Virus record (IMG/VR): IMGVR_UViG_3300035698_022190
Coordinates: 1-64,000 of that record
Length of the DNA stretch: 64,000 bases
Direction: 5' to 3' (one strand)
Position numbers and translations under genes: made by a program. Below are positions 20,729 to 40,300 of the stretch, piece by piece. The notes beneath the pieces are model-generated. The model saw only the letters and a program-made list of their open reading frames with translations. It was not told the DNA's origin and made no database searches. The first letter of the stretch is position 1, and each line of letters opens with the position of its first letter.

Positions 20729-21176
20729 TATATTTGATTAAATAATTGTTTAGGTCGACCAACCATGCTTTTTTAAAAGCTTTTAATGGTATGGATTTAC
20801 GGCCCATTTTTCCTTCCCAGTAGTCTGTAACTACGGGAATAGGGGTTATAAAAGCTTTGTCCTTATATACCTTTTTAAAGTGTATTAAGAAAAAAGCTAT
20901 CCCACCTAAACTTTCAACAATTTGTAAGTATGTTAATTGGTGTTGGTGTATGTTTGCTAAAGGAAAACTTGTTTTACTTTGTGTTTCTTTAGCGTCAAAA
21001 GCTAAAAATTTTCCGCCTTTTATAAGTCCCGTGTAGTCTACAGTAGAGCTTTGTGCTATTAAACCTTTCGCTGTCACTAATATAGGAACAGGAACTTTTA
21101 AAATTAAAGCTTTGCCGTCTTTACGGTACTGTAAATTAACTGTTTCGGCTGTTTTTTCTAATTGATTATAAGGCAT
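20718..21176 (-). CDS. recU: RecU-family Holliday junction resolvase
   Basis: STVDYTG, AFDAKET and SFPLANIHQHQ motifs; start MPYNQLE. Confidence 0.85.
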   Translation of the reverse strand: MPYNQLEKTAETVNLQYRKDGKALILKVPVPILVTAKGLIAQSSTVDYTGLIKGGKFLAFDAKETQSKTSFPLANIHQHQLTYLQIVESLGGIAFFLIHFKKVYKDKAFITPIPVVTDYWEGKMGRKSIPLKAFKKAWLVDLNNYLIKYIDE

Positions 21177-21723
21177 CTTCAAAATTTGGGCTGTACCCAA
21201 AGGTTTCAAAATCTAATTTATGGTACTCTTTTATAAGATCCACCAACTCTGGGGTATAATACTGATCTAAAGAGTTCCCCTTAGTTGCCCCAACAATAGG
21301 CAATACTAAGTTGTACTCTTTTAAAAAGGATGTTGTTGTAAAAGAAGTTGGCAAGTGCTCAAAAGGTATAGTATGATCAATACGAAGTTGATGATTTTTG
21401 ATAATAGTTGTAATTGGCCTATCTAAAAGTAATTTTGTTTCTTTTATAGCCAATTTTAAATATTCAGTAAAAGACAACACACCTGCATTTAGTATGTTTT
21501 TTGTTTGCCTATACCTGTAATGAGATATAGCCCTGTGATAAGGATTGCGGACACTACAAAAAGTTGTATAGTTTAGAGCATGTTTTGGGACATCATAGTA
21601 ATGTCTACGAGTTCCTCCAATGACTTCAGTGCCTGAAATAGTAAGTAATGCTTTTTTAATAGATCTAGACGCCGTTCTTGGTATTAATAAGTATACAAAT
21701 TTATCTTTATTTGATATTATCAT
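21166..21723 (-). CDS. Sulfotransferase family 2 protein
   Basis: 5'-PSB-like IPRTASRSI; 3'-PB-like VRNPYHRAISHY; C-terminal DFETFGY. Confidence 0.75.
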   Translation of the reverse strand: MIISNKDKFVYLLIPRTASRSIKKALLTISGTEVIGGTRRHYYDVPKHALNYTTFCSVRNPYHRAISHYRYRQTKNILNAGVLSFTEYLKLAIKETKLLLDRPITTIIKNHQLRIDHTIPFEHLPTSFTTTSFLKEYNLVLPIVGATKGNSLDQYYTPELVDLIKEYHKLDFETFGYSPNFEDAL

Positions 21724-22273
21724 ATTTTTTTAATTCACGAATTATTTCAGTTAAGCTATTCCAGTGGTTTCCGTCTGTCCACATTCCTGTGTGTGCAGCA
21801 GGAAAATCTTGTATCTCGGTATCTATTAATTCTACTTTATTGAAATAAGTGAATGCTCTATCTGCTTCTCTATTAAAAAACTTAGGGTTATCTAACCATT
21901 GCTGGAAAGAAAACATATTTTTAACTAAGTTTTTATTAAAAAGTGAGCCGTATCCTACTAAGGCAACTTTACCATCAGAAATTCTTTGATAATAAGTTCT
22001 CCTTTCTGCCTTACAATTTGCAATAATAGTGCCTTCCTTATAATTATCTATAAGTTCACCTATATTATTAATAAGACAATCATCGTCTTGAGTATATACT
22101 ATGTCATTTTTAGCAGTTAAAATAGCCTCATATCTAGTATATACTTGATTACCTTTATCTTTAGCGATAATAATTTCATCAAAAAAGGGTTTAATATGTT
22201 GAACTATTTGTTTTAGTTCTTGTTCTCTTGTACCCCTGGTTGGGAGTACTGCAGAAATTTTTAAATTAGTCGT
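21707..22273 (-). CDS. GT-A fold glycosyltransferase (188 aa), apparent ACG start
   Basis: Frame is open far upstream of the listed 69-aa ORF: KISAVLPTRG...AKNDIVYTQDDD...LVGYGS. AGGAGG lies 7 nt before ACG 22273. Confidence 0.65.
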   Translation of the reverse strand, partial: TTNLKISAVLPTRGTREQELKQIVQHIKPFFDEIIIAKDKGNQVYTRYEAILTAKNDIVYTQDDDCLINNIGELIDNYKEGTIIANCKAERRTYYQRISDGKVALVGYGSLFNKNLVKNMFSFQQWLDNPKFFNREADRAFTYFNKVELIDTEIQDFPAAHTGMWTDGNHWNSLTEIIRELKKYDNIK

Positions 22274-23103
22274 AGTAATTCCTCCTTTGTATATCTTTCA
22301 GCGTAGGAAGAATCAAGACCATCTGCAGTTAACTTTTCGTGCATATTTTCACCTGGCTGTAAGCCTATCACTTTAATTTTTGGTTTAGTGTTTGCATATT
22401 TTTCTATCATCGCCTCAAGCAAGTCTCCAATTTTAGCCGATTTCATAGAAGTTTTTTGGGGCTCTGCATTTGTTGCATTCTTTAAACATGAAAAAATTAG
22501 ATCTACTGCTTCCTGCACAGTCCAATAAAAACGGGTTGCTTCCATATCAGTTACTATTATCTCTTCATTATTTATAAGACGCTCTTTCCATTTACATAAT
22601 ACAGATCCCGTAGAATAAATAATATTTCCGTATCGTACCGTTCGGTACTTTGTATCAGAATTAAGGCGCTCATAATCCAAAAACATGCGTTCCATTAACA
22701 TCTTTGACGCCCCATATACACCACTAACTTGTGCAACTTTATCAGTACTTATACCTATTATAAACTTAGGTTTATTTTTGCGTGTCCAGTCTAGTAAATT
22801 CATAGTACCTATTACATTACTATTTATACATTCTCTAACATGTGTTTCCGCTAAACCTATATGTTTAAAAGCTGCTAGATGGTAAATTCCCGTGACGCCT
22901 TGACAAGCTTTAGCACACGAATATTCATTAGCAATGTCTCCCGTTATAATTTCTATTTCAGGAAAGTGTTCTTTTAATGTAATTAAATTTCCTTCATTTC
23001 GTGCTATTGTCACTAAATCAACATTATTTTTAGCACGTAATCTCTTTATTAGCTCATATCCTAAAAATCCGGATCCGCCAGTAATTAAATATTTATCCTT
23101 CAT
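22261..23103 (-). CDS. UDP-GlcNAc 4,6-dehydratase-like (PseB/CapD family SDR)
   Basis: ITGGSGFLG, HLAAFKH, STDKV, YGASK, VRYGN..STGSV, TRFY and IGLQPGENMHE motifs. Confidence 0.85.
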   Translation of the reverse strand: MKDKYLITGGSGFLGYELIKRLRAKNNVDLVTIARNEGNLITLKEHFPEIEIITGDIANEYSCAKACQGVTGIYHLAAFKHIGLAETHVRECINSNVIGTMNLLDWTRKNKPKFIIGISTDKVAQVSGVYGASKMLMERMFLDYERLNSDTKYRTVRYGNIIYSTGSVLCKWKERLINNEEIIVTDMEATRFYWTVQEAVDLIFSCLKNATNAEPQKTSMKSAKIGDLLEAMIEKYANTKPKIKVIGLQPGENMHEKLTADGLDSSYAERYTKEELLRLI

Positions 23104-23755
23104 AATTTATTGCTTGTCCCATTGGTTGGCCTACTATTAATTCTTCCTTTATTAAAAACCCCGCATTTATTAAAAAGCCTATATCTTTTTTATCTAAACC
23201 TAAAACACTAACTTTATTTGGGTGTCTGGCGGATAACGCAGAATCGTCGGCATAGCACAACGCTGGCTTCCAAGTTGTTTTTACATTTAAGTGATTTAAA
23301 TATTTTGATCCATCTATTTCAAATTCCCAAGGAGTTTTTATTTGTTTTAAAAGGTTTATAAGAAATTCTCTATTCCAAATTGCATATTGTGTGGTAACGG
23401 AATACATTTTATTGTTTATATCAAAAGCACTACATAAGTTACAAGCTACAGCGTCTTTTAGGTCGAGCGGTATATTTGTTTGGATTGGCCGATTTATAAA
23501 GTAATCGTCTAAAGCAAATATTATAAACTTATCAGTTAGTGTGGTTAAATATTTTATAAGATATTTAGCCCAAGCTTGCGATTTACCTTTTTGCGTATCA
23601 TCTAGTTTTATATATTCACCAATAAATAATTTATCAGTGTACTCACCAAAATTTAAAAATTTAATATCAAAACCTGGCAAATATTTACTTAATAAATATG
23701 AACATGCGGGAAGTATCTTCTTACTTGTATTATATCCTATTAGTATTATCTTCAT
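23093..23755 (-). CDS. Putative glycosyltransferase
   Basis: FALDDYF DxD-like motif, QYAIWNREFL..TPWEFE; cluster context. Confidence 0.55.
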   Translation of the reverse strand: MKIILIGYNTSKKILPACSYLLSKYLPGFDIKFLNFGEYTDKLFIGEYIKLDDTQKGKSQAWAKYLIKYLTTLTDKFIIFALDDYFINRPIQTNIPLDLKDAVACNLCSAFDINNKMYSVTTQYAIWNREFLINLLKQIKTPWEFEIDGSKYLNHLNVKTTWKPALCYADDSALSARHPNKVSVLGLDKKDIGFLINAGFLIKEELIVGQPMGQAINYEG

Positions 23756-24182
23756 ATTTTAGTATGTAGAAACCTACATCGTTTTCAATTTTATGTTCTA
23801 TTGCTTTATAGTCATGCTTTATAAATAAATTCATAGAGGGTATATTTCCATCTACTACTTTTGCTATCAATAGAGGGTATATATCGTTGTATGTGCGCAG
23901 TACCCACGCCCCAACCCCATAACCTCTATATTGCTTGTCAATTTTTATCGCTATTTCATTTCCATTATCTATTCTAACGTCTCCGTAATCCTTTAACCTA
24001 TCGCTAATAATATTTATGTTTTGTAAATTCTTTGCTAACCATTTTAAATGCTTATCAAAATTAATTTTGTCTTTGCTTTCTATAGACCATTTTCTTACAT
24101 CAGGGTCATTCTTCCAATCAAAAAGAAGCTTAGCATCCCCTAAGGTAGCTGGTCTAAGTTCTAGGTAAGGTATATATTTCAT
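23730..24182 (-). CDS. GNAT N-acetyltransferase (PseH-like)
   Basis: LRPATLGD..LFDWKNDPDVR, YRGYGVG and N.PS..LF motifs. Confidence 0.8.
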   Translation of the reverse strand: MKYIPYLELRPATLGDAKLLFDWKNDPDVRKWSIESKDKINFDKHLKWLAKNLQNINIISDRLKDYGDVRIDNGNEIAIKIDKQYRGYGVGAWVLRTYNDIYPLLIAKVVDGNIPSMNLFIKHDYKAIEHKIENDVGFYILKYEDNTNRI

Positions 24183-24765
24183 AGTTACTTAGGTTATGGT
24201 ATCCTTGGTCCTCTATTTTTAAGTCTGCTGTGTTTCTTTGATCAAGAGTAGAAAATAACTGGATCCCCCTTACTGCCTGTTCAGGTGTCATATACATATT
24301 CCATCCAAGCATATCAAAGTAATCATCTTGCATAGGAACTTCCCTACGACCATCGAAGCGCGCCCGTTTAAACCAACTGCGTGCATCCTTATCATCCGTA
24401 AGAATCATCCCGCCCCTACCCATTGGTAGTGCTTTTTTCATATGAAATGAAAGACAATGAAGTCCTCCATTATACATATCTTTTTTAAAACGCAGTGCCC
24501 CATCATAAATTTCATAAGGCTCTAGTTCATATATACCTTCCCAAGTGTTACCATTAAAGTTAACAGTCCCTCCGGCATGTATAATTGAACATGGGACGGA
24601 TGGGTAGGTGTACTTTGGTATTGTAACCGCAGTAACTTTTTTATAAACGCAAGATAAAAAGATCGCGGCTGTACAGCTTTCTAACGCAACTGCATATTTA
24701 CTTCCCGCATAACTTGCTATTATATCTTCGAATTCTGCAACTACATTAAAAGGATTATATGTCAT
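24154..24765 (-). CDS. DegT/DnrJ/StrS-family sugar aminotransferase, compact form
   Basis: YAVALESCTAA, SFHMKK (PLP lysine) and GRGGMILTDD motifs; only 203 aa. Confidence 0.8.
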   Translation of the reverse strand: MTYNPFNVVAEFEDIIASYAGSKYAVALESCTAAIFLSCVYKKVTAVTIPKYTYPSVPCSIIHAGGTVNFNGNTWEGIYELEPYEIYDGALRFKKDMYNGGLHCLSFHMKKALPMGRGGMILTDDKDARSWFKRARFDGRREVPMQDDYFDMLGWNMYMTPEQAVRGIQLFSTLDQRNTADLKIEDQGYHNLSNYEIYTLPRT

Positions 24766-25387
24766 ATCTGTTTATTGGATAAGTTTTTGTTCGTCTAAAG
24801 TGTGCCATCATAATTTCATCATTTCCTTCATATAGCTTGCCGTTTTTATAGTTTACCGTATCAAAGTTATTCCAATCTTTCGTTTGATGTACAGTATAAA
24901 CTATATTACAGTTTTTATTTACTATTTTAGTATAGCTAGTTTCTGCCCATCCAGAAGGAGCTGGGTCTTGCAAAATTTGTTTCCATTGTGGATGTAACCT
25001 AAAAAGATTATTAATTTTCTCATTATTTTTATATAATGTCCAAGCCCCCATTACGTAATCAACATGGTTTGACCATATATCAAATTCTTTGGGCAGATAT
25101 TTATCGACATCACCATATACACAATCAAAGTCGGTATGCCCCCATATATCATAATCTTTTATGATGTCGGCGTATATAGCCCCTAGTGCTGGTCTGTAGT
25201 CCCAAACTTTTCCAGTTCCGCCAACTATGTTAGGCTCGATCCCCAATGTTTCGCGAACACGTTCTTTAAAAAGTTTTAAATTTGAGAAGATTTTATAGTC
25301 GTAATTTAAACATTCCATATTAGCAACCCACTGATCCATCCATTCTGGATAGTGCCCAAAGTAGGGTAGTAAAAATATCTTATTCAT
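24755..25387 (-). CDS. DUF6625-like putative glycosyltransferase
   Basis: LPYFGHYP, DYRPALG and WGHTDFDCVYG motifs. Confidence 0.65.
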   Translation of the reverse strand: MNKIFLLPYFGHYPEWMDQWVANMECLNYDYKIFSNLKLFKERVRETLGIEPNIVGGTGKVWDYRPALGAIYADIIKDYDIWGHTDFDCVYGDVDKYLPKEFDIWSNHVDYVMGAWTLYKNNEKINNLFRLHPQWKQILQDPAPSGWAETSYTKIVNKNCNIVYTVHQTKDWNNFDTVNYKNGKLYEGNDEIMMAHFRRTKTYPINRYDI

Positions 25388-25934
25388 AGCTTTCCCAATT
25401 TAGCACATTTTCGTTTCGAAAATAAGGTGCTACGGTTTTAATTTTTAGTTGACTTGGGTAACAGTCTATCATTTTTCTTTTCAACTCTTTTTCTTCTTTA
25501 GTGGGCGTTATAATCTCACTACCCGTAGTTTTACTACTTTGGCCTGCATAGGTCATATAATGTTTTACGTTAAAAAACATTTTTGTTGTTACTCGACTTA
25601 CAGTGTTATGTATCCAGTTACCGCCCTTTTCAATCGCTGGAGTATAAACAAGATCTGCGCCTATGTAAAATAACAGTTTTTGTCGTAACGCTTCTTCTGT
25701 AAAGCTTTTATCTGGAATGTGTAAAAAGTCTACATCGACACCTATTAAAGCCATAGCTGCTAGGGTTTCGTTAATTCTTTGCTCAGTCGTGGCATCGTCT
25801 CCGCGCTCATGCTCAATGTATGAATCCGTACAGATTACAACGATCGGCTTTTCACGCATTATTGTATAGGCGCCAAAAAGAGCTTCATCGTCGTTATGGG
25901 GAGACAAAAAAACAACGTTTTTTATCGTGGACAT
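25380..25934 (-). CDS. PIG-L/LmbE-family N-deacetylase
   Basis: SPHNDDE, R..E and K..CYPSQ motifs. Confidence 0.8.
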   Translation of the reverse strand: MSTIKNVVFLSPHNDDEALFGAYTIMREKPIVVICTDSYIEHERGDDATTEQRINETLAAMALIGVDVDFLHIPDKSFTEEALRQKLLFYIGADLVYTPAIEKGGNWIHNTVSRVTTKMFFNVKHYMTYAGQSSKTTGSEIITPTKEEKELKRKMIDCYPSQLKIKTVAPYFRNENVLNWESYE

Positions 25935-26608
25935 GTTGAATTCCTCTCGTAACCTTTCCAAGCTAAATCAAAAGGCATATCTCGTTTCTGGCCCCCACCC
26001 TGTCGCAATACAGGATTAGTAGAAGCTAATATTTCACGTGTCCATCTTAGCTTTGGGTGATTCCAGTCACCCTCATAATTATTTTGAACAACTTGGTTTA
26101 TAAATTGAAAGTCCCCTCCACAAGAGTGTGGAAATTTTGCATCTTTAACTGCATCTGTAGTCATCACAAATCCTATCATTGAGAGCTGCCCAAAAACTAA
26201 TTCTCTTTGGCCTGCTTTCATTCTATTGTCTGTGGGAACTATTCCACCCGCGGCACGAACTTTGCTGAAAACAATGTCACCATCTCCTAATGTTCTTACA
26301 AAGCGAGATAAAGATGTGGGCATTGTATAAAAATCATCATCATCTATAACACAAAACAACTCGTTTTTTGGTAAAATTTTTAGAGCTAAGTTTAAATATA
26401 AATTATAATGTGGAACTTCGCTAGCTTTAATATAAATAGTTTGATATAGCTTATTTTCATATTGTTTGACATAGTTATTATCATAGTTATCGTCCACTAA
26501 AACAATGTGTTTTATGGTTGGGTAATCTTGAGCTTCTATACTATGGCGACATATTTTAAAGAAATTAGGTCGTCCTGATGTACGTGTTATTATAGTTAAA
26601 GGTTTCAT
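25922..26608 (-). CDS. Glycosyltransferase family 2
   Basis: IITRTSGRP, SIEAQDY, VLVDD, VIDDDD and GGDF motifs. Confidence 0.8.
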   Translation of the reverse strand: MKPLTIITRTSGRPNFFKICRHSIEAQDYPTIKHIVLVDDNYDNNYVKQYENKLYQTIYIKASEVPHYNLYLNLALKILPKNELFCVIDDDDFYTMPTSLSRFVRTLGDGDIVFSKVRAAGGIVPTDNRMKAGQRELVFGQLSMIGFVMTTDAVKDAKFPHSCGGDFQFINQVVQNNYEGDWNHPKLRWTREILASTNPVLRQGGGQKRDMPFDLAWKGYERNSTCPR

Positions 26609-27265
26609 TTATTTACCAAAGGGTGTTGTAAATTTTTCTTCTCCTGGATCTCCGCCCCACTTCTTTTTAAAGTACATGTGGTTTTTATGTGATCCGCGCC
26701 TTAAGCTACTATCTTTTTCTATGCTCTGTGAATTTAAGTATATTACTGGATCTAAAGCTGGGCAATTCATCAAGTGCTTAACGTTTGCCAACTTTACTCT
26801 ATAATGATAATCATTGTCCTCGTAATAAGCAGGAAAAAATTTCTCATCAAAAAATCCCACAGTGTTAAGAATTGATTTATGCATTAAGAAAGCACACCAA
26901 TTTTGTGGCCCTACAAATAGGCTTACATCCGGATTGCTGCCAATTAATTCTAAAATATCTTTTTTGGTTTTACCCAAAACAATGTCATCGTTTAAAATAA
27001 GAAGGTAATCAATGTCGGATAACTTAAAAGCAGTTTTCATCATATGATTCCAGCTCTTCGAAACCCCTAAATTTTTCTCACTTTGAAAGAATGCCACTTT
27101 TTTAAACTCAGTGGGTACTGTAATGTTCTGGCTGCCGTTGTCTACTAATAATAGTAGGTCCATGTCAGACATATTTTTTGCTAAATCTTTTAAAGCTCCG
27201 TCTAAAAGATCTGCTCTATTTATTGTAGGAATACCTACAGCTATTTTTAAATTTTTATTTATCAT
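26609..27265 (-). CDS. Glycosyltransferase family 2
   Basis: VDNGS, NLGVSKSWN, LNDD and GFFDEKFFPAYYEDNDY motifs. Confidence 0.85.
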   Translation of the reverse strand: MINKNLKIAVGIPTINRADLLDGALKDLAKNMSDMDLLLLVDNGSQNITVPTEFKKVAFFQSEKNLGVSKSWNHMMKTAFKLSDIDYLLILNDDIVLGKTKKDILELIGSNPDVSLFVGPQNWCAFLMHKSILNTVGFFDEKFFPAYYEDNDYHYRVKLANVKHLMNCPALDPVIYLNSQSIEKDSSLRRGSHKNHMYFKKKWGGDPGEEKFTTPFGK

Positions 27266-27269
27266 AATA

Positions 27270-27300
27270 GAAAGCGGAGAGGCCCGAAGACCTCCCCGCT
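27270..27300 (-). terminator. Intrinsic terminator (UUCG loop)
   Basis: AGCGGGGAGGTC-TTCG-GGCCTCTCCGCT-TTC. Confidence 0.7.
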
Positions 27301-37392: not shown

Positions 37393-40300
37393 ATGGCTGA
37401 AGAAACCCTAAAATATCGTGTAGAGATTGACTCTTCTGATGTTGGTGCTCAATTAGATCAAATCAGAAATCAAATAGATTCCGCTGTTGGTGCAAGTGCT
37501 GCTTCAGCTGTTGCTCCTCCAGGCCTATCTCAATTTTTAGGAGCAGGTTTTACTCCAGCTTTAGATGGAAGTTTTGCCTCCCCAGATTTAACAGGACGAA
37601 TAAGTTCTGGTATGACCAAAACTCTAGACTTCTTAGAAAGAACAAGCGAACGAGCACAGCTTGGATACTCTAGATTTGTCGATGATGCTAGACGTGTAGG
37701 TCTTTTATCTTCTCCTGATTTTTCACTTTATTCTCCACCACCAAGTGCGGCACAGTCCCAGCTTAACCAAGGTATAACTGGTAATGTTGGGGGTATGTTC
37801 GGATTTGGGTATGATGCTAGGGGATCATTAACTGTAGGCGAATTTAAAAGCATGTCTGCGAGCAGTTTAGCTGGCTTTGCTGGTGATTTGGCCGGCACAG
37901 CTCCAGCAACAATAATAGGGTCCACATTAGCGATGGCTACGCCCTTAGGTTGGGGGACTGTAGGGCTCAGTTTCGGTGCGGACATAGTCGGCGGAATATT
38001 AGCAGGTAATGCAAAGGACCGCAACGCTTTTGCAGAAAGTTTACAAACATTTACTGATCCTATTTTCGGGGGAATGAATCGAAGCACTTCTCGAAACGTA
38101 GCCGAAAATTTAATAGCTCGTACAAAGTCCTATGACGGTTACCTGCAAGGAATGGGAATGAATGATGTTGAAGAAATTATGGCTACTTTCGGAAAAGCTG
38201 GTGGCTATAGTGGTGTAGGAAATGCTCAAGAATTTCAACAAAGAACAAACGAAGTTTTAGACAATGTTAGACAGGTAGCGCATTCTTTAAATGTTTTTCA
38301 AGAAGAGGCTGCACAAATTATGGGTGAGCTTCAACAACGTGGTATTACTTCAGGCGGAAGTATGGGCGGTTTTGCTGCTAAGCAACAAATAGGAGGATCC
38401 ATGGTAGGTATGACCGGAATGGAATTTATCCAAGCTGGTTTACAGGGAGCTCAAATGGTTCAAGGAACAGGAATTGGAGCTACAAATGGTTTTAATATGG
38501 TACAGGGGGCCCTACTAAATGTAGGGGCTGTGCAACAAATGCCCGGTGGAGCTCAACTAGTTAATGACATGGGAGGACAAAACGCCGCCGCTCTTGCCGC
38601 AACTGAAAATGTTTTGCGCCATATGCAAGGTAGTCTTGGACTAGTTAAAACGGCAGGTGTTCTGGGGGGAGGAGACTTCTTTGAGGGCAACGTAACCAAC
38701 CAATTATTAAATGCCGCAACATTTTTTGATGCAGACCCATTAAATTACTTTAGAGCAGTGGGGATGCAAGGGCAGGCAACCGGAACTTTAGGTAGTATGT
38801 ACGGCACACAAGGCATGCAAATAAATATGGTAAACAGTGCTGTGGAAAGAATGCGACAGATGGGGATGATAGCCCCAGGACAAAAAGTGGACAGTACTAT
38901 CTTACAAGGATTTATGCCCGATCTTTATGGTGGTTCGGTTAATGACTCTGCTTTAGCAATACAAGGGGCTTTTCAAGACCCAATGATGGCACGAGCTCGA
39001 ATATTAGAAGGAACAATAGATCAAATCGAAGCAGAAAATGCTTATAGTCCCTGACGAAGGGGTATAGCTTCTTTAAGATCTAATATATCGTCTGTATGAG
39101 GATCTGCAACATATGGTTTCGGCGATGTTCATACAAGACTTCAAGATTTTGGACATGATGTAGTTCAAAAAGAATTGGATTCCTGAAGAGGAAAAACAAC
39201 AACTTCATACAGTGGTGTAAGTGACGGAATCAAATTAATAACTCCTGATGTATCTCAAAGAGCTACTAATGCCGATCTGACAAACCAAGGACGAGAGTAT
39301 TTAGACAACTTAGGAAGAGGCAAAAGTGCACATCTTTACAGAGGAATGGAACGCACTGTAGGTGGTATGATGGCTGAGGGAGGTAATTTAGCAGACTTGC
39401 GCACATTAAATCCTTTAATTATGGACGCAATGTTATATATGCGCGAACCGGCTGAAGTCGCTGGGCAGCTCGCAGAGGATTATATTCTCGGAGAATCACT
39501 TAATTTAACGGGCGATCCTTTGGCAAAAGCCAATCGAGAATATTTAAGACTAAATAATATATGATCTGAAGATAAAACAGGTTTTTTACAAACTAATCCA
39601 GGCGAAAGTCCTTATGACACCTTTGCACAAACGCAGTATGGGGTCGATTCCTATGAGCAATTAGAGGGATGGCAAGCACAAGCCATGCACCAAATGTTCC
39701 GAAATAAAAAACAAGATTTTCATGTTCCTGATAAAGCTTTAAAAAGTATGAGTGCTACAGTGTCTCTCGAAGAAATTGACTTTGGTAATTGGGAAAGCAG
39801 TAAAAACGATTTTTATGAAAGACTAGGCGGTAGTAAGCGTAAAGCGAAACGATTTACTAGAAAGATGGAAGGTATGCCAGGCACTTATTTAGAAAACCTT
39901 GACGCTATACTTTTAGATAAGAATTCTAATGATTATGAATTAGATGCCGCTCAAAATGCAAAAGATGATATTGCTTTCTTCGAAAAGGATTATAATCAAT
40001 TTATTTCAGCAAGAGAGTCTACCAAAATAAAAGACGCAACAATGCAGGAAATACGTTCGTTAGAGCAAAAACTTGGTAAGGATGCCAGCCCTAATATGAT
40101 TAGTGCTGTAATTAGTAGACAAATGGAAGCGGCTAGAAATGGCGAAACAGTTCAGTCACAGGTTCTTTATGGATCAAACTTAACAGCAGCAAAAATAGAA
40201 TTTGATGCAGCAAACGTAGAAGGCCTGTTCGGAGAAGACTTTGATAAATTATATGAAAAGTATGCTGAGACCTTATCTAACGTAGAACTAAAAGATATTA

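What the first reader, a model, noticed from the sequence alone, without database searches (positions are those of the whole stretch)
21166..27265. Nine-gene glycan synthesis and tailoring cluster (rare amino-sugar pathway, deacetylase, sulfotransferase)
Seen: contiguous GT2, GT2, PIG-L deacetylase, DUF6625-like GT, DegT aminotransferase, GNAT, putative GT, 4,6-dehydratase and GT-A, followed by a sulfotransferase. Known: dehydratase + aminotransferase + acetyltransferase (PseB/C/H or PglF/E/D logic) makes UDP-2,4-diacetamido-2,4,6-trideoxyhexose, and N-deacetylation followed by sulfation is the NDST logic of heparan sulfate. Inference: the phage builds a complex, possibly sulfated glycan. The target could be virion proteins, its DNA (the cluster sits among replication genes), or the host surface.
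Basis: partly seen in the sequence, partly recalled or inferred. Interest (0 to 1): 0.65.

Follow-up and report, generated by a model that had tools for sequence, protein, structure and literature searches.

The report
Portable phage glycan-building gene cassette
A salt-lake jumbo phage carries ten tightly packed genes for making a rare amino sugar and building it into a tailored glycan; seven of them form a cassette that other uncultured phages keep next to their capsid genes, so the glycan most likely coats the virus particle, not its DNA.

Summary
Window 21166-27265 (minus strand) holds ten overlapping genes:
- two GT2 glycosyltransferases
- a PIG-L deacetylase
- a DUF6625 glycosyltransferase
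- a DegT aminotransferase
- a GNAT acetyltransferase
- a 220-aa protein, shown here to have a GT-A fold
- a PseB-like UDP-GlcNAc 4,6-dehydratase
- a small GT-A whose only well-placed start codon is ACG
- a sulfotransferase

**New findings:**
- Seven genes (PIG-L through the small GT-A) form a mobile cassette. It recurs in the same order in unrelated uncultured phages, sometimes as gene fusions.
- The DegT is a half-size (about 200 aa) enzyme from a large, almost phage-only family. It keeps the PLP-binding residues and is predicted to form the usual dimer.
- In four of five independent genomic contexts the cassette sits in the head-morphogenesis block. Its position among replication genes here is the exception.
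- This complete genome lacks every known route to a glycosylatable DNA base (no ThyA homologue, TET/JBP or C5-methyltransferase). It has ThyX and dUTPase.

**Verdict:** most likely a virion-glycosylation system, closest in logic to giant-virus fibril glycosylation clusters. The sulfotransferase is an accessory gene, and the heparan-sulfate "NDST" analogy is unsupported. The target is inferred, not demonstrated.

The parts
27273..27300 (-). GC-rich 12-bp hairpin with a T-rich tail, in the only intergenic gap of the region (between SSB and the first GT). It marks the upstream boundary of the cluster and is a possible partial terminator or RNA-stability element.
   Evidence: 12 pairs, 8 G-C, tetraloop. 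All other gene junctions overlap.
26609..27265 (-). GT2-family glycosyltransferase, 218 aa (GT-A). Not part of the conserved cassette.
   Evidence: PF00535 29.5 bits, above the cut-off. phrog_29879 'galactosyl transferase' E 3.5e-24. No tblastn match in related loci.
25922..26608 (-). Probable second GT2-like glycosyltransferase, 228 aa. Weak assignment.
   Evidence: PF00535 E 4e-4, 20.7-21.2 bits, below the cut-off. Acidic DxD-like motifs are visible in the translation.
25380..25961 (-). PIG-L/LmbE-type metal-dependent N-deacetylase. 193 aa from the TTG start, or more likely 184 aa from the ATG at 25934, as in its 186-187-aa homologues.
   Evidence: PF02585 42.7 bits. His22, Asp24, Asp25 and His118 are invariant in 9 phage homologues. 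Fused to GT2 and DUF6625 in L008.
24755..25387 (-). DUF6625 glycosyltransferase, 210 aa.
   Evidence: PF20330 87.3 bits. Invariant DxD (D86, D88) in 14 homologues. Atlas structural neighbour is a 'glycosyl transferase family protein' of Bacteroidota, TM 0.91.
24154..24765 (-). Half-size DegT-family PLP sugar aminotransferase, 203 aa. It consists of the large PLP domain only and has no C-terminal domain.
   Evidence: PF01041 62.4 bits. K111 aligns with the PLP lysine of perosamine synthase. D88, S106, K111 and N156 are invariant. Model pLDDT 88, TMq about 0.7 to perosamine synthase, PseC and ArnB. Predicted homodimer.
23730..24182 (-). GNAT N-acetyltransferase, 150 aa. Presumed to acetylate the newly made 4-amino group.
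   Evidence: PF13302 E 1.4e-4. Best NCBIfam match PseH, E 5e-6, far below the cut-off. Directly follows the mini-DegT in most cassette-bearing loci; in L011 and L017 it lies just upstream of DUF6625.
23093..23755 (-). Glycosyltransferase of a new GT-A family with no Pfam model, 220 aa.
   Evidence: No Pfam, PHROG or NCBIfam hit. 89 relatives, one fused to a Polysacc_synt_2 dehydratase. Invariant 'LDD' and Glu146. Model pLDDT 91.6. Foldseek matches GT6 enzymes and SpsA, E about 1e-6, TM about 0.5.
22261..23103 (-). PseB-like UDP-GlcNAc 4,6-dehydratase (short SDR), 280 aa.
   Evidence: PF02719 202.9 bits. Best NCBIfam PseB, 151.9 bits against a 407.75 cut-off. Best PDB match 2gn4 FlaA1/PseB, E 6e-37, then CapD, FnlA, CapE, PglF. 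GxxGxxG, Thr-Asp-Lys and Tyr-x3-Lys are present.
21707..22279 (-). Small GT-A glycosyltransferase of about 189 aa, with no Pfam hit and no canonical start. The likely start is ACG at 22273-22271, 7 nt after AAAGGAGG; ATT at 22279 or 22258 are alternatives.
   Evidence: Open frame. DNA read. Homologues in 13 loci start 1-3 residues before the conserved first strand and share the QDDDC motif. The ACG is confirmed in contigs from two runs. Atlas neighbours are viral clusters, some GT2/GT64.
21166..21723 (-). Sulfotransferase, 185 aa. An accessory gene, not part of the conserved cassette.
   Evidence: PF03567 35.3 bits over the N-terminal PAPS-binding region. phrog_3347 E 3.6e-12. No homologue in the other cassette loci. 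No APS kinase in the genome.

Best explanation
The ten genes are a self-contained, cytoplasmic glycan factory.

**Step 1: an unusual sugar donor.** The family assignments and catalytic residues are shown; the chemistry is inferred.
- The PseB-like SDR dehydrates host UDP-GlcNAc to a UDP-4-keto-6-deoxy-HexNAc.
- The half-size, dimeric PLP enzyme (mini-DegT) aminates C4.
- The GNAT acetylates that amine, giving a UDP-2,4-diacetamido-2,4,6-trideoxyhexose.
- The configuration is unresolved. The PseB-like Tyr signature leans towards the L-altro series.
- The pathway stops at the UDP-hexose level, because the genome has no nonulosonate synthase and no CMP-sugar synthetase.

**Step 2: assembly (inferred).** Five small soluble GT-A enzymes (two GT2, DUF6625, the new 220-aa GT-A and the 189-aa GT-A) build an oligosaccharide on an acceptor in the cytoplasm.

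**Step 3: tailoring (inferred from family behaviour and the fusion).** PIG-L enzymes act on GlcNAc glycosides, not on nucleotide sugars. The GT2-PIG-L-DUF6625 fusion in another phage suggests this order: add GlcNAc, remove its acetyl group to expose a free amine, then add the next sugar.

**Step 4: sulfation (weakest step).** In this phage only, an accessory sulfotransferase may add sulfate using host PAPS.

**Target (inferred from comparative context).** Most likely virion structural proteins, chiefly head or fibre proteins, giving the particle a glycan coat. The core seven genes are a mobile cassette that has moved between unrelated phages. Here it landed in the replication operon.
For: **Enzyme identities and active-site residues**
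- The mini-DegT homodimer is predicted with ipSAE 0.90 against a best control of 0.00. That mark was reached by 20 of 30 proteins solved as pairs of one chain and by 1 of 23 solved as single chains.
- The runs agree in 100% of contacts and the partner's pLDDT is at least 91.
- Invariant N156 of one copy touches the phosphate-loop residues 29-33 and Y54-P55 of the other.
- This pass may reflect the model's memory of DegT dimers.

**The mini-DegT always sits in nucleotide-sugar contexts**
- In 54 of 85 viral loci an NDP-sugar 4,6-dehydratase lies close by, at a median of about 600 nt downstream. Acetyltransferases, methyltransferases and GTs are also common.
- The same holds for the single clearly cellular case, in Bdellovibrio.

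**A conserved, mobile cassette**
- The same genes recur in a largely conserved order in L008, L009, L011, L015, L017, L021, L023 and L091, and in partial form in L004/L006.
- The flanks are unrelated to those of the window.
- Two fusions link neighbouring steps: GT2+PIG-L+DUF6625 and the 220-aa GT-A+dehydratase.

**A soluble system**
- No hydrophobic segment is long enough to be a TM helix.

**Head-gene context elsewhere**
- In the complete 41-kb phage L021 the order is terminase, portal, protease, major head protein, one ORF, cassette.
- In the L015 lineage the order is major head protein, GT, cassette, collagen-like tail fibre.
- In L004/L006 the cassette lies just upstream of terminase and portal. 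In L008 it abuts the portal gene.

**This phage can glycosylate proteins**
- A 756-aa protein beside candidate head genes matches the protein O-heptosyltransferase TibC over almost its full length, E 3.7e-64.

**Precedents**
- Giant-virus fibril glycosylation clusters have the same parts list, including a 278-aa dehydratase and a sulfotransferase (PMC10117803).
- Mycobacteriophage capsid and tail-tube glycosylation, as summarised in PMC12619734.
Against: - No glycan, glycoprotein or enzyme activity has been observed. Everything is inference from sequence, predicted folds and gene context.
- In this genome the cluster lies in the replication operon, not beside structural genes.
- The acceptor and the initiating GT are unidentified.
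- The small GT-A has a non-canonical start (ACG or ATT), so it may be poorly expressed.
- The second GT2 and the GNAT assignments are below curated cut-offs.
- The six loci of the L015 lineage are not independent, so the head-gene association rests on four independent contexts.
- Peripheral-membrane GTs that act on lipid-linked sugars also lack TM helices, so solubility does not exclude a host-envelope target.
- A half-size DegT has never been shown to be active.
Confidence: 0.5

Rival explanations
1. Host-envelope remodelling. The soluble GTs act at the inner face of the membrane on the host's undecaprenyl-linked O-antigen, capsule, S-layer-glycan or teichoic-acid intermediates. This would change the cell surface during infection, for example to block superinfection or to stop progeny sticking to debris.
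For: - GT2 and related GT-A enzymes, PseB/DegT/acetyltransferase trios and PIG-L enzymes are typical of bacterial surface-glycan loci.
- The bacterial structural neighbours of DUF6625 are Bacteroidota GTs.
- Published annotations of similar cyanophage genes assume cell-surface modification (PMC12801897).
- Lack of TM helices does not exclude peripheral-membrane GTs.
Against: - None of the ten cluster proteins matched a phosphoglycosyl-transferase, flippase, polymerase or ligase family, and none has a TM-length hydrophobic segment. The rest of the genome was not scanned for these families.
- The cassette moves between phages with unrelated backbones, presumably with different hosts. That is awkward if the acceptor is a host-specific lipid-linked intermediate.
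- In small complete lytic-type genomes it sits inside the head operon.
- The mini-DegT family is almost absent from cellular genomes: 5 pattern hits in 185,579 species, 4 of them on phage-sized MAG contigs.
Confidence: 0.22
2. DNA hypermodification. The cluster glycosylates the phage genome to evade restriction, and is expressed together with the replication genes around it.
For: - The cluster is co-oriented with and embedded in the replication operon.
- Phage GT-A enzymes with an R...DDD...ED motif do glycosylate DNA (bioRxiv 10.1101/2023.12.21.572611). The small GT-A has a QDDDC motif.
- The sulfotransferase's only isolated-phage relative also lies among replication genes.
Against: - Every documented route needs a hydroxylated base made by a ThyA homologue (hmC, hmU, 5hoC; PMC13326640) or by MT+TET/5mYOX.
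- This CheckV-complete genome has none of them. The TET/JBP search had no positive control.
- It does have ThyX and dUTPase, which points to ordinary thymidine.
- Five other cassette-bearing viral records lack ThyA homologues, including one rated 100% complete.
- No known DNA glycan uses diamino-trideoxyhexoses, deacetylation or sulfation.
- The cassette's usual neighbours are head genes.
Confidence: 0.07
3. A small-molecule product. The GT + PIG-L deacetylase + aminotransferase logic also occurs in mycothiol, bacillithiol and 2-deoxystreptamine aminoglycoside pathways. The cluster could make a soluble amino-glycoside metabolite used against the host or competitors.
For: From established knowledge, not tested here: characterised PIG-L family members include MshB, BshB and the aminoglycoside 2'-N-acetylparomamine deacetylases, each acting straight after a GT. 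The best NCBIfam hit of the PIG-L is BshB1, though only at E 9.5e-4.
Against: - The cluster has no aglycone-forming enzymes (no inositol-phosphate or 2-deoxy-scyllo-inosose synthase, no Cys ligase).
- Five GTs imply an oligosaccharide, not a pseudo-disaccharide.
- The head-operon location in other phages fits a structural role better.
Confidence: 0.05

Closest known systems
Megavirinae (Mimivirus/Moumouvirus) fibril glycosylation gene clusters
   Same: - A virus-encoded, self-contained cluster with a UDP-GlcNAc 4,6-dehydratase, a DegT-type aminotransferase, an N-acetyltransferase and several GTs.
- Moumouvirus australiensis also has a sulfotransferase, and its dehydratase is only 278 aa.
- Its fibrils contain GlcN and diNAcBac (PMC10117803). 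This matches the deacetylated amino sugar and the trideoxy-diamino sugar predicted here.
   Different: - A tailed phage of bacteria, not a giant virus of amoebae.
- The aminotransferase is half-size (203 aa against 352-384).
- The acetyltransferase is a GNAT.
- A PIG-L deacetylase and DUF6625 are present, and there is no APS kinase.
- Sequence-level homology to the giant-virus genes was not tested. The target in the phage is inferred, not shown.
Mycobacteriophage virion glycosylation (Freeman et al. 2023, as summarised in PMC12619734)
   Same: Phage-encoded GTs modify capsid and tail-tube subunits. In relatives of this cassette the genes likewise lie directly beside the major head protein gene.
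   Different: To my knowledge (not checked here), the mycobacteriophage loci consist of GT genes without a sugar-nucleotide pathway. Here there is a full amino-sugar pathway plus tailoring enzymes. In this genome the cluster is not next to structural genes.
Pseudaminic acid pathway, early steps (PseB/PseC/PseH)
   Same: The best-scoring characterised relatives of the SDR (PseB), the DegT (PseC) and the GNAT (PseH). The Asp-Lys and Tyr catalytic signature of PseB is shared.
   Different: - All three score far below the equivalog cut-offs (151.9 against 407.75; 37.2 against 423.5; 26.7 against 93.1).
- No PseI/NeuB synthase and no CMP-transferase anywhere in the genome. PseG was not searched for.
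- No nonulosonic acid can therefore be made.
Bacillosamine pathway (PglF/PglE/PglD)
   Same: The same three-reaction logic from UDP-GlcNAc. PglF is among the SDR's PDB matches (E 4e-29).
   Different: From established knowledge, PglF has Met where this SDR has Tyr, and PglD is a hexapeptide-repeat acetyltransferase, not a GNAT. Some other phages pair the mini-DegT with a hexapeptide acetyltransferase, but this one does not.
Phage DNA glycosylation systems (T4 hmC glucosylation, RB69/DLP3 arabinosyl-5hoC, MT/TET-linked GTs)
   Same: Phage GTs encoded close to replication genes.
   Different: The defining base-hydroxylating enzyme is absent from the complete genome. No such system uses amino-sugar synthesis, deacetylation or sulfation (none of these terms occurs in Pyle et al.).
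Heparan-sulfate NDST (N-deacetylase/N-sulfotransferase)
   Same: Only the abstract idea of deacetylation and sulfation occurring in one glycan pathway.
   Different: The protein families differ: PIG-L and Sulfotransfer_2/Gal3ST-like rather than, from established knowledge, NDST's own deacetylase domain and Sulfotransfer_1. The two genes are not adjacent, and the sulfotransferase is not conserved with the deacetylase.

Membership tests
DegT/DnrJ/EryC1/StrS sugar aminotransferases | PLP-binding lysine, the Asp that binds the pyridine nitrogen, and a fold-type-I large domain | tested here: met
   PF01041 62.4 bits, above the 19.8 cut-off. K111 aligns with the catalytic Lys of perosamine synthase. 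D88 and K111 are invariant. Foldseek TMq 0.66-0.72 to perosamine synthase, PseC and ArnB.
DegT/DnrJ/EryC1/StrS sugar aminotransferases | Full two-domain architecture of about 360-400 aa, including the C-terminal small domain | tested here: not met
   203 aa. The C-terminal domain and about 45 residues of the large domain are absent. Every PDB match listed is 358 aa or longer. The short form is conserved in thousands of relatives.
DegT/DnrJ/EryC1/StrS sugar aminotransferases | Homodimer with a shared active site | tested here: met
   Prediction only. ipSAE 0.90 against a best control of 0.00. The mark was reached by 20 of 30 proteins solved as pairs of one chain and 1 of 23 solved as single chains. 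Contacts agree 100%, pLDDT at least 91. N156 contacts the partner's residues 29-33 and 54-56. The pass may reflect memory of solved DegT dimers.
PseB (inverting UDP-GlcNAc 4,6-dehydratase, TIGR03589) | Score above the equivalog cut-off | tested here: not met
   151.9 bits against a cut-off of 407.75. 280 aa against a 324-position model.
PseB (inverting UDP-GlcNAc 4,6-dehydratase, TIGR03589) | NAD(P)-binding GxxGxxG, the catalytic Asp-Lys pair and Tyr-x3-Lys | tested here: met
   Alignment to 2gn4 shows GGSGFLG, STDK and YGASK aligned with PseB's GGTGSFG, STDK and YGATK. CapE and FnlA have Met at the Tyr position.
Pseudaminic/legionaminic acid pathway as a whole | Nonulosonate synthase (PseI/NeuB) and CMP-sugar synthetase (PseF) | tested here: not met
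   No PF03102 and no PF02348 match in the complete genome, with positive controls.
PIG-L/LmbE N-deacetylases | His-x-Asp-Asp metal/base motif and a distal His ligand | tested here: met
   PF02585 42.7 bits, above the 28.2 cut-off. H22, D24, D25 and H118 are invariant in 9 phage homologues.
GT-A fold glycosyltransferases (for the 220-aa ORF) | Rossmann-like GT-A fold with an acidic DxD-type motif | tested here: met
   Model pLDDT 91.6. 364 PDB matches at E<=0.001; all those listed are GT-A enzymes (GT6, GT2 such as SpsA, B4GALNT1), at TM about 0.5. D83/D84 and E146 are invariant or nearly so. Activity is untested.
Phage DNA base-glycosylation systems | An enzyme that makes a hydroxylated pyrimidine acceptor (ThyA homologue, or C5-MTase plus TET/5mYOX) | tested here: not met
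   No PF00303 or PF00145 (both with positive controls) and no PF12851 (no control rang) in the 100%-complete genome. None in 5 other cassette-bearing records.
NDST-type coupled N-deacetylation/N-sulfation | NDST-type deacetylase and Sulfotransfer_1 N-sulfotransferase, physically or evolutionarily coupled | tested here: not met
   The families found are PF02585 and PF03567/phrog_3347. The sulfotransferase is absent from all other cassette loci.
PAPS-dependent sulfotransferases | 5'-phosphosulfate and 3'-phosphate binding motifs | tested here: inconclusive
   PF03567 matches residues 2-72, the part of the profile that covers these motifs, at 35.3 bits against a cut-off of 22. The 'PRTASRS' and 'RNPYHRAIS' stretches resemble these motifs from memory. 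No PDB relative by sequence. At 185 aa the protein is short for the family.
Virion-glycosylation systems of phages and giant viruses | Glycan demonstrably attached to virion proteins | not testable with these tools
   Only context is available: the cassette sits beside head genes in 4 of 5 independent contexts, and a TibC homologue lies beside candidate head genes in this genome.

The most novel reading that the evidence does not exclude
In this phage the cassette has been moved from the head operon into the replication operon and given a sulfotransferase. It may therefore decorate the DNA itself, or a DNA-bound or packaged protein, with an amino-sugar, partly deacetylated and sulfated oligosaccharide. 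That chemistry would not start from a hydroxymethylated or hydroxylated pyrimidine, which would be a kind of nucleic-acid or nucleoprotein glycosylation not yet described.
Probability: 0.06. Interest if true: 0.95.

Novelty: new variant of a known kind. Interest (0 to 1): 0.55.

Why it matters
**Biology**
- Virus-encoded glycan coats are established for giant viruses and for a few mycobacteriophages.
- If the inference holds, tailed phages in the environment commonly carry a portable cassette that makes its own rare amino sugar and builds a tailored, possibly charged glycan on the virion.
- Small 36-41 kb phages spend roughly 5-7 kb on it, which implies strong selection.
- Such a coat could affect adsorption, aggregation and stability in brine, or recognition by host defences. 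It would also matter for phage-host modelling and phage engineering.

**Enzymology**
- The cassette is a source of miniaturised enzymes: a roughly 200-aa PLP sugar aminotransferase, about half the size of any solved relative and predicted to keep the dimeric active site.
- It also includes GT-A families that no curated domain model covers.
- These are attractive for glyco-engineering and for defining the minimal fold-type-I aminotransferase.

**Annotation**
- Proximity of GT genes to replication genes is not, on its own, evidence for DNA glycosylation.

Tried and rejected
**Searches that found nothing**
- blastn of the whole cluster against 50,697 phage records: no match. The genome has no close sequenced relative.
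- Single-sequence locus search with the mini-DegT: nothing. An alignment was needed.
- DUF6625 against isolated phages by tblastn: no match. No paper in the library mentions DUF6625.
- Literature searches for phage + LmbE/aminotransferase, phage bacillosamine + capsid, and phage-encoded sulfotransferase + glycan: nothing relevant.
- Sequence search of the PDB with the sulfotransferase and the PIG-L: no hits.
- PAPS supply: no APS kinase in the genome, so any sulfation must use host PAPS.
- A TibC-like gene in other cassette-bearing loci: none; only the methyltransferase part matches. The TibC locus is therefore independent of the cassette.

**Ideas considered and dropped**
- Truncation or pseudogene for the short DegT: rejected. 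Thousands of relatives have the same length, with invariant catalytic residues.
- Assembly error for the missing start of the small GT-A: rejected. Contigs of two runs show the same ACG with no differences.
- Nonulosonic-acid synthesis: rejected.

**Read-laying**
- Done on 5,966 letters, using assembled contigs only, so nothing can be said about expression.
- The 'letters between a joint' at 22499/23132 rest on sides of about 20 nt and are not listed as a joint. I treated them as an unrelated sequence.

**Not used**
- The big representative-protein search, because the word search and family scans sufficed.
- Any genetic code other than table 11.

Full report
**Setting.** The window is the first 64 kb of a 210,208-bp IMG/VR virus record that CheckV rates 100% complete. 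GC content is about 35%. The phage is a myovirus with a tail sheath and baseplate wedge. It is found in salt-lake metagenomes and has no close sequenced relative.

**Observation.** Ten genes lie head to tail on the minus strand between 27265 and 21166.
- GT2 (26609-27265)
- a weaker GT2 (25922-26608)
- PIG-L deacetylase (25380-25961)
- DUF6625 (24755-25387)
- DegT (24154-24765)
- GNAT, with its best NCBIfam match to PseH (23730-24182)
- a 220-aa ORF with no family (23093-23755)
- a Polysacc_synt_2 SDR (22261-23103)
- a GT-A-like open frame (21707-22297)
- a sulfotransferase (21166-21723)

All junctions overlap except one. That 46-nt gap, after the SSB gene, holds a 12-bp GC-rich hairpin with a T-rich tail (27273-27300). 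The flanks are replication and nucleotide-metabolism genes: SSB, Sak4, exonuclease, primase and helicase on one side; Holliday-junction resolvase, dUTPase, RNR and DNA polymerase on the other.

**The sugar-nucleotide trio.**
- *The SDR.* All its closest solved relatives are UDP-GlcNAc 4,6-dehydratases, led by PseB/FlaA1 (2gn4, E 6e-37), then CapD, FnlA, CapE and PglF. It keeps the GxxGxxG motif, the Thr-Asp-Lys triad and the Tyr-x3-Lys of PseB, where CapE and FnlA have Met. At 280 aa and 151.9 bits it is far below the PseB equivalog cut-off.
- *The DegT.* It is only 203 aa. Its lysine K111 aligns with the PLP lysine of perosamine synthase. About 45 residues of the large domain and the whole C-terminal domain are missing.
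- *Not a truncation.* The word search returned 7,566 hits, and the best 120 are nearly all about 200 aa, at up to 76% identity. In an alignment of 31 members, D88, S106, K111, R117 and N156 are invariant.
- *Fold and dimer.* The AlphaFold model (pLDDT 88) superposes on the large domain of perosamine synthase, PseC and ArnB at TMq about 0.7. Every listed PDB match is 358 aa or longer. A homodimer is predicted with ipSAE 0.90 against a best control of 0.00. That mark was reached by 20 of 30 proteins solved as pairs of one chain and 1 of 23 solved as single chains; contacts agree 100% and pLDDT is at least 91. N156 of one copy touches the phosphate-loop residues 29-33 and residues 54-56 of the other. 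This pass may reflect the model's memory of DegT dimers.
- *Context.* In 54 of 85 viral loci an NDP-sugar 4,6-dehydratase lies close to the mini-DegT, at a median of about 600 nt downstream. Hexapeptide acetyltransferases, methyltransferases and GT1/GT2/GT10 enzymes are also common neighbours.
- *Distribution.* A pattern scan of 185,579 species genomes found only five copies. Four are on roughly 40-kb MAG contigs. One is in Bdellovibrio, again straight after an SDR and a UDP-sugar dehydrogenase. IMG/VR gave 372 copies.
- *End point.* The genome has no NeuB-type synthase and no CMP-sugar synthetase. The product should therefore be a UDP-2,4-diacetamido-2,4,6-trideoxyhexose used directly by a GT, not a nonulosonic acid.

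**Glycosyltransferases and tailoring.**
- *The 220-aa ORF.* It has 89 relatives and no Pfam model. One relative is fused to a Polysacc_synt_2 dehydratase. Its model (pLDDT 91.6) is a GT-A fold matching GT6 enzymes and SpsA. It has an invariant 'LDD' motif.
- *DUF6625.* It has an invariant DxD. Its structural neighbours are bacterial GTs of Bacteroidota.
- *The small GT-A.* It has no Pfam hit, but homologues occur in 13 loci with a conserved QDDDC motif. Its atlas neighbours are viral clusters, some carrying GT2 or GT64 domains.
- *Its start codon.* Homologues begin 1-3 residues before the first strand. The codon at that position in the window is ACG (22273-22271), 7 nt after AAAGGAGG. Contigs from two runs show the same ACG. 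The rest of the frame is intact.
- *PIG-L.* It keeps the His-x-Asp-Asp motif and a distal His.
- *Sulfotransferase.* It matches Sulfotransfer_2 over its N-terminal PAPS-binding region, and a phage Gal-3-O-sulfotransferase family. It has no solved relative by sequence, and the genome has no APS kinase.
- *Solubility.* None of the ten proteins has a TM-length hydrophobic segment.

**A mobile cassette.**
- The genes PIG-L, DUF6625, mini-DegT, GNAT, 220-aa GT-A, SDR and small GT-A recur in L008, L009, L011, L015, L017, L021, L023 and L091 at 32-74% identity. The order is largely conserved, with local rearrangements in L011, L017 and L021; L009 and L091 show no PIG-L match. L004/L006 lack the SDR and the 220-aa GT-A.
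- None of the window's flanking genes matches those loci.
- In L008 the GT2, PIG-L and DUF6625 are one 677-aa protein. This suggests the three steps act in succession on one acceptor.
- The two upstream GT2 genes and the sulfotransferase are not part of the shared set.

**Where the cassette sits elsewhere.**
- *L021,* a complete 41-kb genome with terminal repeats: terminase, portal, protease, major head protein, one ORF, the cassette, then a GT1, all on one strand.
- *The L015 lineage,* six loci sharing a major head protein at 44-71% identity: major head protein, GT, cassette, collagen-like tail fibre.
- *L004/L006:* the cassette precedes terminase and an SU10-type portal.
- *L008:* it abuts the portal gene.
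- Four of five independent contexts are therefore head-morphogenesis blocks. The window's replication context is the exception.

**DNA as target.**
- Every documented phage DNA glycosylation starts from a base hydroxylated by a ThyA homologue (PMC13326640) or by a methyltransferase plus TET/5mYOX. Such pathways normally cluster together (bioRxiv 10.1101/2023.12.21.572611).
- The complete genome has no PF00303 or PF00145 match, both with positive controls, and no PF12851 match, for which no control rang.
- It does encode ThyX and dUTPase.
- Five other cassette-bearing records also lack a ThyA homologue.
- I therefore rate DNA unlikely, though not formally excluded.

**Protein glycosylation capacity.** Outside the window a candidate major head protein gene is followed, two genes on, by a GT1. 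Next comes a 756-aa protein (genome 206428-208698). Its first 350 residues match the protein O-heptosyltransferase TibC at E 3.7e-64, with no LPS heptosyltransferase among the hits. It is fused to an FkbM methyltransferase. This locus is independent of the cassette, but it shows that the phage invests in modifying proteins.

**Comparison with known systems.**
- The nearest analogue is the fibril glycosylation cluster of Megavirinae. Moumouvirus australiensis combines a 278-aa 4,6-dehydratase, an aminotransferase, an acetyltransferase, GTs, a sulfotransferase and an APS kinase, and its fibrils contain GlcN, QuiN and diNAcBac (PMC10117803).
- Mycobacteriophages glycosylate capsid and tail-tube subunits (summarised in PMC12619734).
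- The heparan-sulfate NDST analogy fails on protein families and on co-conservation.

**Conclusion.** The enzymology is well supported by sequence, predicted fold and context. The virion target is an inference from comparative gene order. No activity or glycan has been observed. I file this as a new variant of virus-encoded glycan biosynthesis, notable for its portability and its miniaturised enzymes.

Noticed in passing
Outside the window: genome 205467-208698 (L090:13468-16699): A GT1 (319 aa) is followed by a 756-aa fusion: a near-full-length homologue of the protein O-heptosyltransferase TibC (E 3.7e-64 to 4rap) joined to an FkbM methyltransferase. It lies two genes downstream of a candidate major head protein (L090:10389-11285, phrog_2522 E 8.8e-7). 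A TibC-type protein glycosyltransferase in a phage may be worth a finding of its own.
   Followed up: partly
Outside the window: genome 67939-68925 (L089:3939-4925): A 328-aa actin-like protein matching Pfam Volactin (E 2e-70) and weakly MreB and PilM. It could be a cytoskeletal element of this jumbo phage.
   Followed up: no
window 22256-22288: The small GT-A gene has no ATG/GTG/TTG start. A strong AAAGGAGG is followed 7 nt later by ACG, one transition away from ATG, at the position where homologues start. The ACG is identical in contigs from two runs.
   Followed up: partly
window 27273-27300 (minus strand): A 12-bp, 8-GC hairpin with a tetraloop and a T-rich tail fills the only intergenic gap. 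It ends a few bases before the first GT's start codon, so expression of the cluster must pass through it.
   Followed up: no
L021 (41,077-bp record with terminal repeats) and L015 (36,299-bp record with terminal repeats): These small, apparently complete phage genomes devote roughly 5-7 kb, more than a tenth of their length, to the glycan cassette and its accompanying GTs.
   Followed up: partly
Proteins P0057 and P0058: Two mini-DegT relatives carry an N-terminal Endonuclease_7 (PF02945) domain. They could be real fusions or gene-calling run-throughs.
   Followed up: no
Outside the window: genome 72300-73613 (L089:8300-9613) and 70036-71910: A further GT1 glycosyltransferase (437 aa, phrog_2170 E 9e-34) lies next to a weak portal candidate (624 aa).
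   Followed up: no
Outside the window: genome 198480-200171 (L090:6481-8172): A 563-aa ORF with a LAGLIDADG homing-endonuclease domain, upstream of the candidate head genes.
   Followed up: no
L096 (Stenotrophomonas phage DLP_6, record 38223-38837): The only isolated-phage relative of the sulfotransferase (29% identity) lies between the clamp-loader and DNA-polymerase genes, with no glycan cluster around it. Phage sulfotransferases may therefore have a substrate unrelated to this glycan.
   Followed up: no
window 22499-23132 (table 5c): Contigs in three runs join these two places through 16 unrelated letters, at higher depth than the phage. The matching sides are only about 20 nt, so this is probably another organism and not a deletion variant of the dehydratase gene.
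   Followed up: no
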